DNA of 64,000 bases, taken from the IMG/VR virus record IMGVR_UViG_3300047548_001236, positions 1-64,000 of that record; one strand, given 5' to 3'. Below the pieces are notes generated by a model, which worked only from the letters and a program-made list of their open reading frames with translations, was not told the DNA's origin and did not search any database. Positions within the stretch are counted from its first letter, which is position 1. Each line of letters opens with the position of its first letter. Shown piece by piece: positions 8,169-41,800 of this stretch. A program made the translations under genes and the position numbers.

Positions 8169-8244
8169 GATATTATAAATAAGTATGGTTCGCGGATTTC
8201 GTGGTAGTCATCCCAACCATTCTAGAAACAATAGGAGTCCCAGC

Positions 8245-9036
8245 ATGTCTATTTATACACCTTATACCTATCTTATAGGATGGTCTTCAATAAGTAAATA
8301 TTATTATGGCGTCCGTTTTGCGAAAAACTGCCACCCAAGTGATTTGTGGGTGAAGTACTTCACCTCTTCCAAAACCGTAGCTGAATACCGTAAACTTTAC
8401 GGTGAGCCTGACGTGATTGAGGTTCGAAAAACATTCACAGATAAACACTCGGCAATTTTGTGGGAGGAGAGAGTGCTCCGAAAACTAGATATCAAGCACA
8501 ACGAAAAGATGCTTAATGCGAACGTTGCAGGCGCAATCGTGAAGAATCTTGATCACGCAAAAGGAAGACCGAGTAAACTCAGAGGCAGATATTGGACGGA
8601 GGAACAGAAAGCGAAGCTCAGAAAACCAAAATCAGTCCCTAGTCCGTTAAAGGGAAAACAATTGACAGATGAACATAAAGAGAAGCTCCGTGCTGCTAAA
8701 CGCGACTATAAACCGTGGAACGCTGGCAAAACTGGCCTACAGAGTCATTCGAGCGAAACAAAAGAAAAAATGCGGATGGCTAAGATCAAGTCAAAAGTCA
8801 TTATATTTTCAGAATGCCCTTGCTGTAAGGAAATAAAAGTTAAGCCAAATCAAACTTTCTGTAGCAATTCGTGTAGAGCGAAACACAACGCACAAAAATT
8901 ATCAGCTCAGGGAAAATTTGGATTTCAGAACAAGTCTAACCAAGATGCTGCGCAGTTAGCTAGAAGGCCCGTTGGGTTATACGGTGGAGCCCATACCGCA
9001 GACTCAATCAAGCAGCTAGGCGAACCTGTGGCTTGA
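8245..9036 (+). CDS. Homing endonuclease, GIY-YIG-like with NUMOD3 repeats
   Basis: YTYLIGW...YYYGVR, HSSETKEKMR repeats; late promoter TATAAATA at 8174-8181; antisense to its neighbours. Confidence 0.8.
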   Translation: MSIYTPYTYLIGWSSISKYYYGVRFAKNCHPSDLWVKYFTSSKTVAEYRKLYGEPDVIEVRKTFTDKHSAILWEERVLRKLDIKHNEKMLNANVAGAIVKNLDHAKGRPSKLRGRYWTEEQKAKLRKPKSVPSPLKGKQLTDEHKEKLRAAKRDYKPWNAGKTGLQSHSSETKEKMRMAKIKSKVIIFSECPCCKEIKVKPNQTFCSNSCRAKHNAQKLSAQGKFGFQNKSNQDAAQLARRPVGLYGGAHTADSIKQLGEPVA

Positions 9037-9336
9037 AATTATCGTTTGCAATGTTTGTTGCAGTTATTATTGTCTTCGCGGTAACGGCGCTTAGATCCCG
9101 GTAGCTCCATCCTGCCTAGTCCGCCTGTCGATCCTATTTCGAGCCCATCAAAGATACACTTGCTGATATCCTGTTAGATTTCAACTTGACCCACTACAGA
9201 TCAAAGTATCTAACACCGCTTCCGTTATCAGTCCGGTAGGTAGTTAACCTGTTTCCTTTGGCAAGTGTATCTATGGTGGACCCGCTGGGTACCGCCCCCA
9301 GGTCCAGAACGTGTTCAGTGAATATCATCACTACAA
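8962..9336 (-). ncRNA. ssrA: Circularly permuted (two-piece) tmRNA
   Basis: Acceptor piece ends GGGGGCGGTACCCAGCGGGTCCACCA (9274); intervening segment 9147-9273; coding piece starts GGGCTCGAAATAGGATCGAC (9146); tag ANDNFKPQVRLAA* (9008-9049); G3.U70 pair. Confidence 0.93.
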
Positions 9337-9339
9337 TTG

Positions 9340-9370
9340 TATTTATACTAGATCATGCTGAACAAGTCAA
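9340..9370 (-). promoter_or_regulatory. Overlapping sigma70-type (TTGACT-17-TATAAA) and T4 late (TATAAATA) promoter for tmRNA
   Basis: TTGACTTGTTCAGCATGATCTAGTATAAATA. Confidence 0.75.
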
Positions 9371-9500
9371 CCGCGATCGTATCTTCTTTGCTTTTCTTCG
9401 TAGGTGTCGTATCTTTCGGTCTCGCTTCCCATCAACTCCTCCTATGAAAAGAGGGGCTAACCATTGGCCCCTCACGAGTCTATTACGCGACCAGACGTAT

Positions 9501-10390: not shown

Positions 10391-10861
10391 TTAAATAGTG
10401 TTGTGAGCGTAGTGGTCGCCAGCGAAGCTCGCAGCAAATGCTTGTGGCTTCATCTTGGGTTCTACGCCTGTGACACCAAGCACGTATCCTGCTGCTTGCG
10501 TAGCAACACAGTTAGAACCGTGTTTTGGGTCGGTGTTGACATCGCAGTGGATCTCAACATCAAATTCGTCAATGAACGGAGCGAGCTGAATATACAGTTC
10601 ACAAGACTTCATAACCTCATTCATGAGGCGCGTTGAAGGACGATTCTTCTTAACGTCGAAGTCGGGTTCGACAGAGCGGTGCTTGAAGACTCTACATCCT
10701 CTATTACCGTTCATGTGGACAACGCATACTGTTGCATATTTTGCGAACCAGCGACCATCCTTACGAAAACGAACGGAGTCTGTACCGATATAGACTTTTG
10801 TATCCTTGTTGAGCGAGTACAGTAAGTCGACCAACTCTTCTACTTGTGCTTGTGTGAACAT
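10391..10861 (-). CDS. RNase H-like YkuK family protein
   Basis: VYIGTDS, RLMNEV, EIHCDVN, AASFAGD. Confidence 0.8.
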   Translation of the reverse strand: MFTQAQVEELVDLLYSLNKDTKVYIGTDSVRFRKDGRWFAKYATVCVVHMNGNRGCRVFKHRSVEPDFDVKKNRPSTRLMNEVMKSCELYIQLAPFIDEFDVEIHCDVNTDPKHGSNCVATQAAGYVLGVTGVEPKMKPQAFAASFAGDHYAHNTI

Positions 10862-10941
10862 TATAACACCTCATTATCTCCTTTCTGATGTAAACGTAAT
10901 TGTTTCACATCAGTAGGTACAATTACGAAAACCTGTAGTAT

Positions 10942-11628
10942 TTATGACGTCCAACGATCGTTTGTAAACTCATGAAAGTCAACAGGACCGTTTACACCTT
11001 TGTAATATTCTCCGATCACATATCTTCCGTGATACACAGCACCGCAGTCAAGATTGACGCGATTGGGTGATTTGATCGGACCGTGCTTTCTTGGTGTATG
11101 ACCATGAGTGAGAAACAGACGATTGTCTTTACTCGGGAAACTCATCCAGTCGTCCATTCGAGTCCACAACAGACTGCCGCTACTTTGTAGCCCAGGAGGA
11201 TACGTGTCATCGTAGAACGCATGTGCAAAAACGTTATTATCCTCGAAGTGGAACTTTTTCAGTCCCCTCATCCACTCGATCACTTCTTTAGGAAACGCAG
11301 CGTGAGCTCTGTCGTAGTTGACAGGTTGAATTGAAGGGGGGCAAAAGTGAACAAACACGTTGAAGTCATAAAGGCGATCTTTGCGGTCATACGCATCCAG
11401 AAACATGTCTTCGTGGTTGCCCATCAGGCAAATGAACTCCCAGTTCTTGGGAGTATACATTACGGTCTCAACGACTTTCTTGTTGTCTGGACCACGGTCG
11501 ATGTAGTCGCCAAGGAAGATGATCTTCCCACCGTTAGGGTTGTTCTTGTACACAAAATCCAGAGCTTGATCAAGTAGATCGTCACACCCATGAATATCGG
11601 GAAATACGTAATATCTTTGTTCATCCAT
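10942..11628 (-). CDS. Ser/Thr phosphatase-type metallophosphoesterase
   Basis: DIHG, GDYIDRG, GNHE, HGHTP. Confidence 0.92.
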   Translation of the reverse strand: MDEQRYYVFPDIHGCDDLLDQALDFVYKNNPNGGKIIFLGDYIDRGPDNKKVVETVMYTPKNWEFICLMGNHEDMFLDAYDRKDRLYDFNVFVHFCPPSIQPVNYDRAHAAFPKEVIEWMRGLKKFHFEDNNVFAHAFYDDTYPPGLQSSGSLLWTRMDDWMSFPSKDNRLFLTHGHTPRKHGPIKSPNRVNLDCGAVYHGRYVIGEYYKGVNGPVDFHEFTNDRWTS

Positions 11629-16016: not shown

Positions 16017-16093
16017 TGGCACCGCGCCGGGATTCAAACCCTGTCCGCCTCAGTCACAGTGAGGAATGCAAATTCAATTACACCTGTCGCGGC
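16017..16093 (-). tRNA. Atypical tRNA-His(GUG)
   Basis: Loop CTGTGAC; degenerate D and T arms; G73. Confidence 0.6.
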
Positions 16094-16130
16094 ATTGTTA
16101 TTCTATTTATACTATATCTGGTCGGACGTG

Positions 16131-18569: not shown

Positions 18570-18674
18570 TGGTATCCCAGACAGGATTCGAACCTGCACC
18601 TACGTCGACTGATAACCAGCGGTAGGCCCTAGCTTTTTATGGCCCCGGTGTTTACCCACTTCCACCACTAGGAT
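18570..18674 (-). tRNA. Degenerate Leu-like tRNA with enlarged variable arm
   Basis: Acceptor, D and T arms and CCA intact; anticodon stem poorly paired. Confidence 0.5.
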
Positions 18675-18680
18675 ATTTTT

Positions 18681-18757
18681 TGGAGGTCGACCATGGACTT
18701 GAACCACGACCCCAGCTCTTGCAAGAGCTGTACATTAACCAATTTTGCTAATCGACC
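18681..18757 (-). tRNA. tRNA-Cys-like with 8-nt anticodon loop
   Basis: CAGCT-CTTGCAAG-AGCTG; U73; CCA. Confidence 0.7.
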
Positions 18758-21237: not shown

Positions 21238-21313
21238 TGGCGGCCCTGGTGGGACTCGAACCCACGACCATGAGTTTTAGAGGCTCTAGCTCTACCATCT
21301 GAGCTACAAGGCC
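21238..21313 (-). tRNA. Amber suppressor tRNA (anticodon CUA)
   Basis: Loop CT-CTA-AA, canonical D/T arms, G73, CCA; two mismatches in anticodon stem. Confidence 0.8.
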
Positions 21314-23399: not shown

Positions 23400-24355
23400 T
23401 CTACTTGCAACGGGGAGTACGAGGGGATTTGCACCAGGCCCCTGAACCTTCTCCTCTTTTCAGCTCCTCAGGGAAGGAGCCTACTTCTGCACCTTGCTTA
23501 CTCCGCTCTGGAAGTAGAATATTGTTGCGGGTGAGATTACCCCGTATTGTGAGCGCCTTTCCGATGTACCACATCCCTTGCGAGGAGTGTTGTCGGGTTA
23601 TCCACAAGAGTCTTTCGATCATCTTGTATCGCTCAGTGCTGCCGTTTTTGAGGTCTGGCTGTTGACCTGTCGCATGTTACTACTCGTCCGTCTTTCCTAC
23701 GCCTGCCTTGCGAGCAGCTCAGAGGCGCTAACCTCCTACGTGATCATTCTGAACAACTACTCTAGCCTTGCGAGCCTTCGTAGGCCTGATTATCTTTCGA
23801 CTCAGGCATTAAGCACCTTTCGTAACACACCGGAGCAGACTTTCGCTTTTTGAATCTATGTTGCTTTGAACCAAAATCAAACGCTAATTTAATAGCTGCG
23901 AACCTACTGAGAAGTGCTGCTCCAGTTGCTCCACACCTTGTTAGATGCAGAATACCACACTCCTCCTGTCTTTCTCCTTGCGGGATACTCAACGTCACTT
24001 CACGAATCCGGTGTGACCCTTCCTCGTTGATGATCCTACACCGCCCTTCTACGCGAATAGTCGGACTATGTAGACACCTGTTGGACTTTTCCATTCGTTA
24101 GTTTGGCTGAAAACTGTTTGGGCGCCAACCCTCTTACACCTCACCGATCGGCTCTGGTGCTATCCTTTCGGACAGTCTTCCTAACTTACTGGATACCTCC
24201 TAGCTTCTAAGGCTAGAAGGGACTTGCTTTCGGTTTAATCCGAGTCAAGTCTATCCCAGGCTTGTATGAATGGACCATTTTACTGGCGCAGGTATGTAGG
24301 AATCCCTGCTTTGGGTGTGTTACCACACTTACCCTGACGACGTCATACCGCCATT
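23400..24355 (-). ncRNA. Candidate large structured ncRNA (about 950 nt)
   Basis: No credible ORF, many hairpins, downstream of a promoter and boxA within the tRNA island. Confidence 0.45.
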
Positions 24356-27947: not shown

Positions 27948-28078
27948 GTGTATTCTCCGTATGTTTTGTATATGTGCGTATATTTTTGTATGAACAATGT
28001 GTAGGCACGATGTAGTAATGCGTTCACAACACTATTTATACACGGTTACGCATACGATACAGCACCTACGAAGAAAAA

Positions 28079-28177
28079 TATCCTGGTTGGACTCGAACCA
28101 ACGGCCTGCGCTTTATTCCCAGCGTTTGGGTCCTTCACCATGAGGGAGCACTGCTCTACCGACTGAGCTACAGGATG
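28079..28177 (-). ncRNA. tRNA-like RNA with 34-nt anticodon loop, no CCA
   Basis: Canonical D and T arms; two hairpins in the anticodon loop. Confidence 0.6.
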
Positions 28178-31631: not shown

Positions 31632-31712
31632 TGGTGCTGATGGAGGGACTCGAACCCTCAAAAACTCACTTTCTGAAAATGAGATGTCTACCTGAAATTG
31701 CATCACATCAGC
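31632..31712 (-). tRNA. tRNA-Leu(CAG), short variable region
   Basis: Loop TTCAGAA. Confidence 0.8.
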
Positions 31713-41674: not shown

Positions 41675-41800
41675 TGGCGACCCCGGTAGGACTCGAACCT
41701 ACAACCTACTGATTAGATCGTGCCTTAGAAGATTCGCACTTCACTGGGCTTCCATACCCTCAGGCCAAGTCAGTTGCTCTATCCATTGAGCTACGGAGTC
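41675..41800 (-). tRNA. tRNA-Arg(UCU) interrupted by a 50-nt insert in the anticodon
   Basis: Removing 41717-41766 restores a 76-nt cloverleaf with loop CTTCTAA. Confidence 0.85.

What the first reader, a model, noticed from the sequence alone, without database searches (positions are those of the whole stretch)
8962..9336. Phage-encoded two-piece tmRNA with a possibly extended tag
Seen: permuted gene order and tag ANDNFKPQVRLAA. An in-frame upstream GCA in an ATAACT-GCA context could give ATNIANDNFKPQVRLAA. The gene has overlapping early and late promoters. Known: two-piece tmRNA is typical of Alphaproteobacteria, which points to the host group.
Basis: partly seen in the sequence, partly recalled or inferred. 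Interest (0 to 1): 0.6.

Follow-up and report, generated by a model that had tools for sequence, protein, structure and literature searches.

The report
Phage two-piece tmRNA, extended tag
A 283-kb T4-like freshwater phage carries its own alphaproteobacterial-type two-piece tmRNA gene; phage copies of this ribosome-rescue RNA are already known, but this one most likely writes a degradation tag four residues longer than the usual form.

Summary
On the minus strand at 8962-9374, Rfam scores alpha_tmRNA at 74 bits (cut-off 50) and tmRNA_permuted at 90.4 bits (cut-off 47). The gene order is permuted. The acceptor stem has 7 pairs with G3.U70 followed by ACCA. A 127-nt intervening segment is closed by a 12-bp stem. 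ARAGORN misses the gene at default settings.

The extended tag is the better reading. The upstream GCA (9061-9059) sits in the ATAACT context that 54 other phage two-piece tmRNAs use (A at -4 in 53 of 54). It also lies at their usual distance from the tRNA-like domain. The downstream GCA has C at -4, which corresponds to the inactivating A86C mutation of E. coli tmRNA. Two further viral contigs carry the same 17-codon tag and differ only at third codon positions.

The promoter TTGACT-N17-TATAAATA is real. TTGAC and TATAAATA are invariant in four relatives, and the genome encodes a gp55 homologue.

The alphaproteobacterial host is plausible but unproven: phage Melnitz carries an alpha-type tmRNA yet infects a gammaproteobacterium.

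Phage two-piece tmRNAs are already described, so this is a new member of a known kind. Two small additions are a conserved tag extension and mosaic exchange between the tRNA-like and tag modules. No RNA data were available, so processing and tagging are inferred.

The parts
9365..9370 (-). -35 hexamer TTGACT of a sigma-70-type (early) promoter
   Evidence: TTGAC is invariant in window, L005, L107 and L042.
9340..9347 (-). TATAAATA. Its first six bases serve as the -10 hexamer, 17 nt after the -35. The whole octamer is the T4-type late-promoter motif.
   Evidence: invariant in all relatives. There are 46 sites in the genome against a mean of 6.7 for 30 shuffled octamers. A gp55 homologue lies at G000:81631-82125.
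9274..9335 (-). Acceptor piece (62 nt): P2 5' strand, T arm (9301-9285), acceptor 3' strand CGGGTCC (9284-9278), discriminator A and CCA (9277-9274).
   Evidence: Rfam alignment and pair check. 62/62 identical to L005. The predicted transcription start falls at or near 9335.
9147..9273 (-). Intervening segment, presumably excised from the precursor. It is closed by a 12-bp stem (9272-9261 with 9163-9152).
   Evidence: Its length is 127, 81, 110 and 97 nt in the four relatives, identity is only 33-43%, and the closing stem is kept by compensatory changes. Related contigs replace 9158-9266 with 16 nt.
8962..9146 (-). Coding piece: acceptor 5' strand GGGCTCG (9146-9140), D-loop analogue, P2 3' strand, PK1 region (9101-9077), spacer, tag reading frame and 3' domain (9007-8962).
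9059..9061 (-). Favoured resume codon GCA, preceded by T(-5) A(-4) A(-3) C T (9066-9062).
   Evidence: PWM 7.94 bits, rank 1 of 174 positions. It lies 65 nt after GGATCGAC, as in the nearest relatives. ARAGORN -ps80 starts the tag here. The similarity of related contigs stops at 9058.
9047..9049 (-). Alternative resume codon GCA of the canonical ANDN start, preceded by A(-5) C(-4) A T T.
   Evidence: PWM -4.57, below all 54 reference tmRNAs. Position -4 is C, T and C in window, L152 and L153. The Rfam consensus aligns its GCAAACGA here.
9008..9061 (-). Tag reading frame of 17 codons plus TGA: ATNIANDNFKPQVRLAA. The 13-codon version starts at 9049.
   Evidence: The same peptide is encoded in L152 and L153. 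All differences between them are synonymous third-position changes.
8185..9036 (+). Convergent free-standing homing endonuclease gene (283 aa). Its last ~75 nt are antisense to the tmRNA 3' domain and the end of the tag.
   Evidence: Pfam NUMOD3 1.6e-8 and phrog_314 homing endonuclease 5e-12. It is absent between the tmRNA and the VWA gene in L005. A homologue sits in the same place in L152 (59% aa).

Best explanation
This is a functional ssrA gene of a T4-like jumbo phage. It encodes an alphaproteobacterial-type, circularly permuted (two-piece) tmRNA.

Transcription. The gene is read from a composite promoter in which a sigma-70-type -35/-10 pair overlaps a T4-type late TATAAATA motif. The RNA could therefore be made both early and late in infection. 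The transcript starts at about 9335.

Processing. The precursor folds so that the acceptor 3' strand-CCA (ending 9274) pairs with the acceptor 5' strand (starting 9146). A 12-bp stem extends that helix. By analogy with Caulobacter, host tRNA-processing enzymes would remove the 127-nt segment in between. That would leave a ~62-nt acceptor piece base-paired to a ~185-nt coding piece.

Action. The G3.U70 pair and the ACCA end should allow charging with alanine. The phage encodes no SmpB, so host SmpB would have to deliver the RNA to stalled ribosomes. Translation then most likely resumes at the upstream GCA (9061-9059). This adds Ala plus ATNIANDNFKPQVRLAA and ends at TGA. The ANDNF motif and the C-terminal LAA should send tagged proteins to host Clp-type proteolysis.

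Likely benefit. The tmRNA would keep ribosomes free while host and phage mRNAs are being cut. It would act alongside the phage's 51 tRNAs.

Shown here: gene anatomy, family membership, promoter motifs and their conservation, conservation of the extension.
Inferred: processing, charging, use of host SmpB, the resume site, proteolysis and the benefit.
For: Family membership. Rfam scores are above the gathering cut-offs for alpha_tmRNA and tmRNA_permuted. The acceptor stem has 7 pairs with G3.U70 and is followed by ACCA. The T arm has 5 pairs and a P2 duplex forms. All of these are kept by compensatory changes in window, L005, L152 and L153.

Intervening segment. It varies in length and sequence, while its closing stem covaries.

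Phage origin. The record is a complete 283-kb virus with T4-type core genes. There is one tmRNA copy in the genome. The same gene neighbourhood recurs in L005 and L153.

Resume site.
- In 54 distinct phage two-piece tmRNAs, position -4 is A in 53 and position -5 is always a pyrimidine.
- The upstream GCA scores 7.94 bits, the best of 174 positions. The downstream GCA scores -4.57, below every reference.
- The upstream GCA lies 65 nt after GGATCGAC, which matches relatives L107, L112 and L050. The downstream GCA lies at 77 nt.
- L152 and L153 were found with a pattern outside the extension. They carry the extension with contexts ACAACT and ACAAAT. The four variable sites in the first eight codons are all third-position and synonymous.
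- In E. coli, A86 (position -4) is the main frame determinant, and A86C or A86U abolish activity or shift the frame (PMC2481249). SmpB Tyr55 stacks on A86 (PMC8363625).
- Bacterial tags with duplicated starts (ANDNFANDNF...) exist and keep the canonical context at the first GCA.

Promoter.

No SmpB gene in the phage.
Against: - No RNA or proteomic data exist. No run on record as RNA holds this DNA. Processing into two pieces, charging and the resume site are therefore untested.
- ARAGORN does not call the gene at default stringency.
- The Rfam consensus aligns its GCAAACGA to the downstream GCA, and ANDN is the near-universal start of alpha-type tags.
- The PWM also scores 7.85 at an out-of-frame site inside the tag (9036). 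The motif alone therefore does not define a resume site.
- The non-coding 3' domain is as conserved (93%) as the tag between window, L152 and L153. Part of the conservation of the extension may reflect a recently shared module rather than coding constraint. For the extension alone, only two variable sites are informative.
- The second stem of PK1 could not be defined here.
Confidence: 0.78

Rival explanations
1. The same functional phage tmRNA, but translation resumes at the downstream GCA (9049-9047). That gives the canonical 13-codon tag ANDNFKPQVRLAA. The 12 nt GCAACAAACATT would then be an untranslated insertion in the spacer upstream of the resume codon.
For: ANDN is the start of nearly all alpha-type tags. 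The Rfam consensus GCAAACGA aligns to this GCA. MAFFT aligns the single resume codon of L005 with it.
Against: Position -4 is C (T in L152) and position -5 is A. No reference tmRNA has that combination, and it corresponds to the inactive or frame-shifting A86C and U85A mutants of E. coli. The distance from the tRNA-like domain would be 77 nt, against 63-68 in the nearest relatives. The 12 nt are in frame and free of stops, and they vary only at third codon positions. An equally good alignment places L005's GAAAATTACAACT|GCA against the window's GACAATAATAACT|GCA.
Confidence: 0.17
2. The gene is a decayed or decoy tmRNA. It would have been captured from a host or another phage and no longer supports tagging. 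It might, for example, titrate SmpB, as proposed for the TLD-only RNA of mycobacteriophage DS6A.
For: ARAGORN scores it below its default threshold. The insertion displaces the canonical ANDN start from its context. A homing endonuclease ORF runs antisense into its 3' part. DS6A is a precedent (PMC4131195).
Against: All defining pairs are intact and kept by compensatory changes in four diverged relatives. The tag frame is open, ends in LAA plus a stop codon, and encodes the identical peptide in three phages whose neighbouring proteins are 42-66% identical. The promoter is conserved. The Rfam alpha model matches end to end.
Confidence: 0.04
3. The tmRNA is host DNA on a mis-binned or chimeric contig, for example a prophage junction at a bacterial ssrA gene. 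On this reading it is not a phage gene.
For: Bacterial tmRNA genes are common prophage integration sites. Many IMG/VR fragments that carry tmRNAs may be such junctions (PMC4383910, listed).
Against: The gene lies inside a 283-kb T4-like genome, among phage genes on both sides, and behind a TATAAATA late motif. No bacterial genome matched beyond ~40-50 nt, either in 27 pattern hits or in 401 sampled Alphaproteobacteria. Contigs from another run of the same sample (X2, 8865-9153) and from a run of another study (X3, 9144-9374), each identical to the window, together cover most of the gene.
Confidence: 0.01

Closest known systems
Two-piece tmRNA of Alphaproteobacteria (Caulobacter crescentus ssrA; Rfam RF01849 alpha_tmRNA, RF04321 tmRNA_permuted)
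   Same: Circularly permuted gene with the acceptor 3' strand-CCA ahead of the 5' strand. G3.U70 pair. GGCGGTA-type T loop. GGATCGAC D-loop analogue. ANDNF tag core that ends in AA. TAR-N-N context before the resume codon.
   Different: Carried by a phage with no smpB and driven by a T4-type composite promoter. The intervening segment is long (127 nt). The tag has a four-codon N-terminal extension. Sequence similarity to any sampled bacterial tmRNA is limited to ~40-50 nt of the T arm and acceptor.
Phage-encoded two-piece tmRNAs of aquatic myophages (OM43 phage Melnitz, Pelagibacter phage Mosig and HTVC008M-like phages, roseophages DSS3_MAL1 and MD18)
   Same: An alpha-type permuted ssrA in T4-like or large aquatic phages, placed behind an early promoter. 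Buchholz et al. counted 53 two-piece tmRNAs among 18,146 phage genomes, 50 of them aquatic (PMC9004378). DSS3_MAL1 has an annotated ssrA next to tRNAs.
   Different: Only 43 nt are alignable with DSS3_MAL1 and MD18. There is no glutamine riboswitch in the 3' domain. The source is freshwater, not marine. The tag is extended. ARAGORN, the tool used for the published census, misses this sub-lineage at default settings.
Viral contigs L005, L152 and L153 (IMG/VR)
   Same: The same tmRNA lineage, promoter motif and gene neighbourhood. L152 and L153 encode the identical 17-codon tag.
   Different: L005 shares a 100% identical tRNA-like domain but has a different PK1 and an unextended tag (ANENFAPKAYALAA). 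L152 and L153 share the tag module at 93-94% but have diverged tRNA-like domains at 74-82%. The gene is therefore a mosaic.
Bacterial alpha-type tags with duplicated N-termini (ANDNFANDNF..., freshwater MAGs L129, L130, L137, L140, L142, L144, L146, L147)
   Same: Extra in-frame codons at the start of the tag, with the canonical upstream context kept at the first GCA.
   Different: Those are clean 15-nt duplications of ANDNF. Here the extra four codons (ATNI) resemble the tag start only weakly: 7 of 12 nt match GCAAACGATAAT.

Membership tests
tmRNA (SsrA), permuted / two-piece form, alpha type | Covariance-model score above the curated threshold | tested here: met
   RF01849 scores 74 bits against 50. 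RF04321 scores 90.4 bits against 47. Both models match end to end. Among clan members, the alpha model was the one kept.
tmRNA (SsrA), permuted / two-piece form, alpha type | tRNA-like domain: 7-bp acceptor stem with G3.U70 (the alanine identity element), discriminator A and CCA, and a 5-bp T arm with a 7-nt loop | tested here: met
   GGGCTCG pairs with CGGGTCC; all 7 pairs are standard and the third is G.U. ACCA follows. The T arm is CTGGG / GGCGGTA / CCCAG. Compensatory changes occur in L152 and L153.
tmRNA (SsrA), permuted / two-piece form, alpha type | Circular permutation: the acceptor 3' strand lies upstream of the 5' strand, separated by a dispensable segment | tested here: met
   CCA ends at 9274 and the 5' strand starts at 9146. 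The 127-nt segment is variable in relatives and closed by a covarying stem.
tmRNA (SsrA), permuted / two-piece form, alpha type | Short reading frame without a start codon that ends in a hydrophobic ...AA tag plus a stop codon | tested here: met
   The frame ends ...VRLAA followed by TGA at 9010-9008.
tmRNA (SsrA), permuted / two-piece form, alpha type | Resume codon preceded by pyrimidine(-5), A(-4), purine(-3) | tested here: met
   Met at the upstream GCA (T, A, A at 9066-9064). Not met at the downstream GCA (A, C, A). Functional basis.
tmRNA (SsrA), permuted / two-piece form, alpha type | Pseudoknot PK1 between P2 and the resume codon | tested here: inconclusive
   The Rfam model places one 4-pair stem at 9100-9085, one pair of it non-standard. 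Relatives covary in that stem (sequences). I could not define the second stem.
tmRNA (SsrA), permuted / two-piece form, alpha type | Detection by ARAGORN | tested here: not met
   No call at default, -ps or -ps90. A permuted tmRNA is called at -ps80. The same holds for L005, L152 and L153. This is a tool threshold, not a biological criterion.
tmRNA (SsrA), permuted / two-piece form, alpha type | Cleavage into two RNAs, alanylation, SmpB binding and tagging of stalled peptides | not testable with these tools
   No holder of this DNA is on record as RNA. The contigs laid cannot show RNA ends.
T4-type late promoter | TATAAATA motif, over-represented upstream of genes, in a genome that encodes the late sigma factor gp55 | tested here: met
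   There are 46 sites against 6.7 for shuffled octamers. 80% are followed by an ORF within 150 nt, against 57% for controls. The gp55 homologue has E = 5e-18. Use at this gene in vivo was not tested.
Sigma-70-type (early) promoter | TTGACA-like and TATAAT-like hexamers 17 nt apart | tested here: met
   TTGACT-N17-TATAAA matches 5 of 6 in each hexamer. TTGAC is invariant in four relatives while the spacer varies. The arrangement is weak in L153 (TTGAGT-N18).

The most novel reading that the evidence does not exclude
The tag-coding half of the gene (PK1, extended tag, 3' domain) moves between phage tmRNA genes as a module, independently of the tRNA-like half. The homing endonuclease gene that abuts and overlaps its 3' end may drive this by co-conversion of flanking DNA during co-infection. 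On this reading, the conserved 17-residue tag ATNIANDNFKPQVRLAA is a phage-specific signal rather than a copy of a host tag. It might feed the phage's own ClpP-fold protease.
Probability: 0.15. Interest if true: 0.55.

Novelty: new member of a known kind. Interest (0 to 1): 0.33.

Why it matters
- Phage tmRNAs show that large phages bring their own ribosome-rescue RNA as well as tRNAs. This example extends the known set to a freshwater T4-like jumbo phage.
- The lineage escapes ARAGORN at default settings, so censuses built on that tool undercount phage tmRNAs.
- The extension is a natural test of the rule that the A four bases upstream, not the ANDN sequence, sets the resume codon. Here the two signals are 12 nt apart, so one mass-spectrometry experiment could separate them.
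- The mosaic pattern indicates recombination within a small RNA gene: a tRNA-like domain identical to one relative and a tag module identical to others.
- None of this changes the general picture of trans-translation.

Tried and rejected
- ARAGORN at default, -ps and -ps90 found no tmRNA.
- The annotated phage collection gave only 43-nt matches, to Phaeobacter phage MD18 and DSS3_MAL1.
- An exact 32-mer of the T arm plus acceptor gave 0 hits in genome contigs. The tag pattern gave 0 hits in metagenome contigs.
- Search for a bacterial donor: the 27 genomes hit by the pattern and 401 sampled Alphaproteobacteria match only the T arm and acceptor. The 401 genomes include the unpublished G045, which contributes one 37-nt match of the same kind. 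No separate claim rests on it.
- My first pattern for relatives with the extension allowed only synonymous changes, so it was biased. I repeated the search with a pattern outside the extension and counted only codons not fixed by that pattern.
- No glutamine riboswitch of the Melnitz kind is present.
- The phage genome has no SmpB and no SspB.
- TAG recoding, raised by the tRNA with anticodon CTA, is not needed. Table 11 gives 252 ORFs of at least 150 aa, and reading TAG as sense adds no more than reading TAA as sense does. No other genetic code was used.
- I tried by hand to define the second stem of PK1 and a pseudoknot in the 3' domain, and abandoned both.
- RNA evidence: no holder of this DNA is on record as RNA. 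The one library labelled RNA-Seq is probably DNA and is kept as contigs.
- The large protein searches, structure prediction and complex prediction were not needed and were not used.
Full report
**What is there**

The window is the first 64 kb of a 282,855-bp IMG/VR virus record that CheckV rates as complete. Its gp41 helicase and UvsX genes resemble those of T4-like phages of Sinorhizobium, Caulobacter and Stenotrophomonas, at about 64-68% nucleotide identity. It encodes a homologue of the T4 late sigma factor gp55 (E = 5e-18). The DNA occurs in freshwater and freshwater-sediment metagenomes.

On the minus strand, Rfam finds alpha_tmRNA at 8962-9374 (74 bits, gathering 50) and tmRNA_permuted at 9008-9335 (90.4 bits, gathering 47). 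Both models match end to end. It is the only tmRNA in the genome. ARAGORN finds nothing at default settings and calls a permuted tmRNA only at -ps80.

**Anatomy**

- The promoter comes first: TTGACT (9370-9365), a 17-nt spacer, then TATAAATA (9347-9340).
- The acceptor piece follows at 9335-9274. It holds the P2 5' strand, the T arm CTGGG/GGCGGTA/CCCAG, the acceptor 3' strand CGGGTCC, and ACCA.
- A 127-nt intervening segment (9273-9147) begins and ends with a perfect 12-bp stem, 9272-9261 pairing with 9163-9152.
- The coding piece starts with GGGCTCG (9146-9140). This pairs with the 3' strand over seven standard pairs, and the third pair is G.U, the alanine identity element.
- The D-loop analogue, the P2 3' strand, the PK1 region, a spacer, the tag frame and a 3' domain follow, ending near 8962.
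- The same pairs form in three related viral contigs (L005, L152, L153), kept by compensatory changes in the acceptor stem, T arm, P2 and the closing stem.
- The intervening segments are 81-127 nt long and only 33-43% identical. That is what one expects of a segment discarded during maturation.
- Related contigs in the source sample replace 9158-9266 with 16 unrelated letters.

**The tag**

The frame from 9049 gives ANDNFKPQVRLAA. The frame from the upstream GCA at 9061 gives ATNIANDNFKPQVRLAA. Four lines of evidence favour the upstream codon.

1. Context.
   - In 54 distinct two-piece tmRNAs from viral contigs, the base four positions upstream of the resume codon is A in 53.
   - In the same set, the base at -5 is always a pyrimidine and the base at -3 always a purine.
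   - Fourteen bacterial examples follow the same rule.
   - The upstream GCA has T, A, A at these positions. The downstream GCA has A, C, A.
   - A weight matrix built from positions -8 to -1 ranks the upstream site first of 174 positions in the coding piece (7.94 bits).
   - The same matrix puts the downstream site at -4.57, below every reference sequence.
   - The rule has a known mechanism. In E. coli, A86 at position -4 is the main determinant of frame.
   - A86C and A86U abolish activity or shift the frame, and U85A shifts it by one base (PMC2481249).
   - SmpB Tyr55 stacks on A86 to position the resume codon (PMC8363625).
2. Spacing. The upstream GCA lies 65 nt after the conserved GGATCGAC. 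The relatives with the same PK1 type (L107, L112, L050, L042) have 64-65 nt. The downstream GCA lies at 77 nt.
3. Relatives.
   - A search pattern taken from the far end of the tag, outside the extension, found two more viral contigs. Both carry the extension.
   - Their contexts before the upstream GCA are ACAACT and ACAAAT. Position -4 of the downstream GCA is T in one of them.
   - In the first eight codons, which the search pattern did not fix, the four variable sites are all third-position and synonymous. By chance this would occur about once in 81.
   - The 15-nt spacer just upstream differs at 3 and 5 positions.
   - The three phages encode the identical 17-residue peptide, although their neighbouring proteins are only 42-66% identical.
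4. Other indications. ARAGORN's own heuristic starts the tag at the upstream GCA. The similarity of other related tmRNAs in the metagenome stops at 9058, right after that GCA.

Several points count against the upstream codon.
- The motif alone is not sufficient: an out-of-frame site inside the tag scores 7.85.
- The non-coding 3' domain is as conserved as the tag, so part of the conservation may reflect a shared module.
- The extension alone has only two informative sites.
- The Rfam consensus aligns to the downstream GCA.

I put the extended tag at roughly 0.75-0.8. Compared with L005, the closest relative in the tRNA-like domain, the window has a 12-nt in-frame insertion immediately after the resume codon. 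Bacterial tags with duplicated starts (ANDNFANDNF...) show that such insertions occur naturally.

**Promoter**

- TTGAC and TATAAATA are invariant in window, L005, L107 and L042, while the spacer between them varies.
- TATAAATA occurs 46 times in the genome. Thirty shuffled octamers of the same composition average 6.7 sites.
- 80% of the TATAAATA sites are followed within 150 nt by an ORF of at least 70 aa, against 57% for the controls.
- Only four TATAAATA sites also have TTGAC at the -35 position.
- Three of those four precede stable-RNA genes: this tmRNA, the tRNA-His/Val/Ser group at about 16,000, and the second tRNA block that begins at 68,676.

Whether both are used is untested.

**Host**

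- The RNA is of the alpha type.
- A 32-nt pattern covering the T arm and acceptor, with three free positions, hit 27 bacterial records. All are titled Alphaproteobacteria or one of its groups (Rhizobium, Rickettsiales, Rickettsia, Thalassospira, Kordiimonas, Robiginitomaculum), or only Proteobacteria/Pseudomonadota. Many are freshwater MAGs.
- No bacterial tmRNA aligns beyond about 40-50 nt. This holds for those 27 records and for 401 sampled genomes of the class (the sample includes the unpublished G045, which adds nothing special).
- The close relatives are all on viral contigs. The gene therefore belongs to a phage-borne lineage and is not a recent capture.
- Phage Melnitz, which infects a gammaproteobacterium, carries an alpha-type tmRNA (PMC9004378). 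The host inference is therefore probable, not proven.

**How it probably works**

The phage has no SmpB or SspB gene, so it must rely on host SmpB, alanyl-tRNA synthetase, tRNA-processing enzymes and Clp-type proteases. It would be expressed through infection and would release ribosomes stalled on cleaved mRNAs. It would mark the incomplete proteins with an ANDNF...LAA tag that host proteases should recognise. These steps are inferred from the family. Only the gene anatomy and its conservation are shown here.

**Mosaic structure**

- Against L005, the acceptor piece (62/62) and the 5' part of the coding piece (45/45) are identical. PK1, the tag and the 3' domain are only 50-60% identical.
- Against L152 and L153 the pattern is reversed. 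The tag and 3' domain are 93-94% identical and the tRNA-like parts 74-82%.
- The two halves of the gene therefore have different histories.

**Homing endonuclease**

A convergent homing endonuclease gene (8185-9036, plus strand; NUMOD3, phrog_314) sits between the tmRNA and the VWA-like gene. In L005 those two genes are adjacent. Its last ~75 nt are antisense to the tmRNA 3' part. L152 has a homologue in the same place (59% amino-acid identity) and L153 has none. Whether this endonuclease contributes to the mosaicism is speculation.

**Comparison with what is known, and novelty**

Two-piece tmRNAs were defined in Caulobacter and occur in three bacterial lineages. Phage copies are documented: 53 two-piece genes among 18,146 phage genomes, nearly all aquatic (PMC9004378). 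Annotated examples include DSS3_MAL1.

This gene is a new member of that kind. The additions are modest:
- a conserved four-codon extension, in which the resume-codon context and the canonical ANDN start are separated;
- a sub-lineage invisible to ARAGORN at default settings;
- modular mosaicism;
- a composite promoter shared with the phage's tRNA blocks.

Interest is about 0.33.

Noticed in passing
window 23528-23965 (-): A full-length GOLLD RNA (Rfam RF02032, 194.9 bits, gathering 150) lies inside the phage's tRNA array.
   Followed up: no
window 21238-21313 (-): A tRNA with anticodon CTA, which ARAGORN labels Pyl; it would read the TAG codon. The genome still reads well under the standard code. 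TAG is the rarest stop, ending 31 of 252 long ORFs.
   Followed up: partly
window 18681-18757 (-): A tRNA call with an enlarged anticodon loop and the four-base anticodon tgca. The amino acid is undetermined. Rfam tRNA scores it at 45.3 bits.
   Followed up: no
window 41678-41800, 28078-28177, 18573-18674, 31635-31712 (-): Rfam tRNA matches that ARAGORN does not call. Three of them are 100-123 nt long, so they may be tRNA genes with inserts or introns.
   Followed up: no
G000:C1:11963-68676: ARAGORN makes 51 tRNA calls in the whole genome, all on the minus strand and in two blocks. The second block (67262-68676) lies just outside the window, behind a composite TTGAC-N-TATAAATA promoter at 68946-68918.
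   Followed up: partly
window ~16020-16100 (-): Downstream of the composite promoter at 16134-16104 lies a tRNA-like stretch that ends in a T-arm-like GGTTTGAATCCCGG and ...GCCA. Neither ARAGORN nor Rfam calls it.
   Followed up: no
window 8185-9036 (+): A free-standing homing endonuclease gene (NUMOD3) is inserted between the tmRNA and the VWA-like gene. Its C-terminal ~24 codons are antisense to the tmRNA 3' domain and the end of the tag. A TATAAATA motif abuts its start at 8174-8181.
   Followed up: partly
G000:C1:247081-247731 (-) = L154:1402-2052: A stand-alone ClpP-fold protease (Pfam CLP_protease 48.8 bits; phrog_1827 'ATP-dependent protease' 221 bits) in a phage of the T4 type. It could conceivably act on tagged proteins, but no link was shown.
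   Followed up: partly
window 10391-11628 (-): An RNase H-like protein (PF04308) and a calcineurin-like phosphoesterase lie upstream of the tmRNA. The phosphoesterase matches the NinI-like phosphatase phrog_246 and, weakly, an RNA-ligase phrog. They may be RNA repair or processing genes.
   Followed up: no
L005, L152, L153 and the window: All four members of this tmRNA sub-lineage score above the Rfam cut-offs but are missed by ARAGORN at default stringency. Phage tmRNA counts based on ARAGORN are therefore lower bounds.
   Followed up: yes
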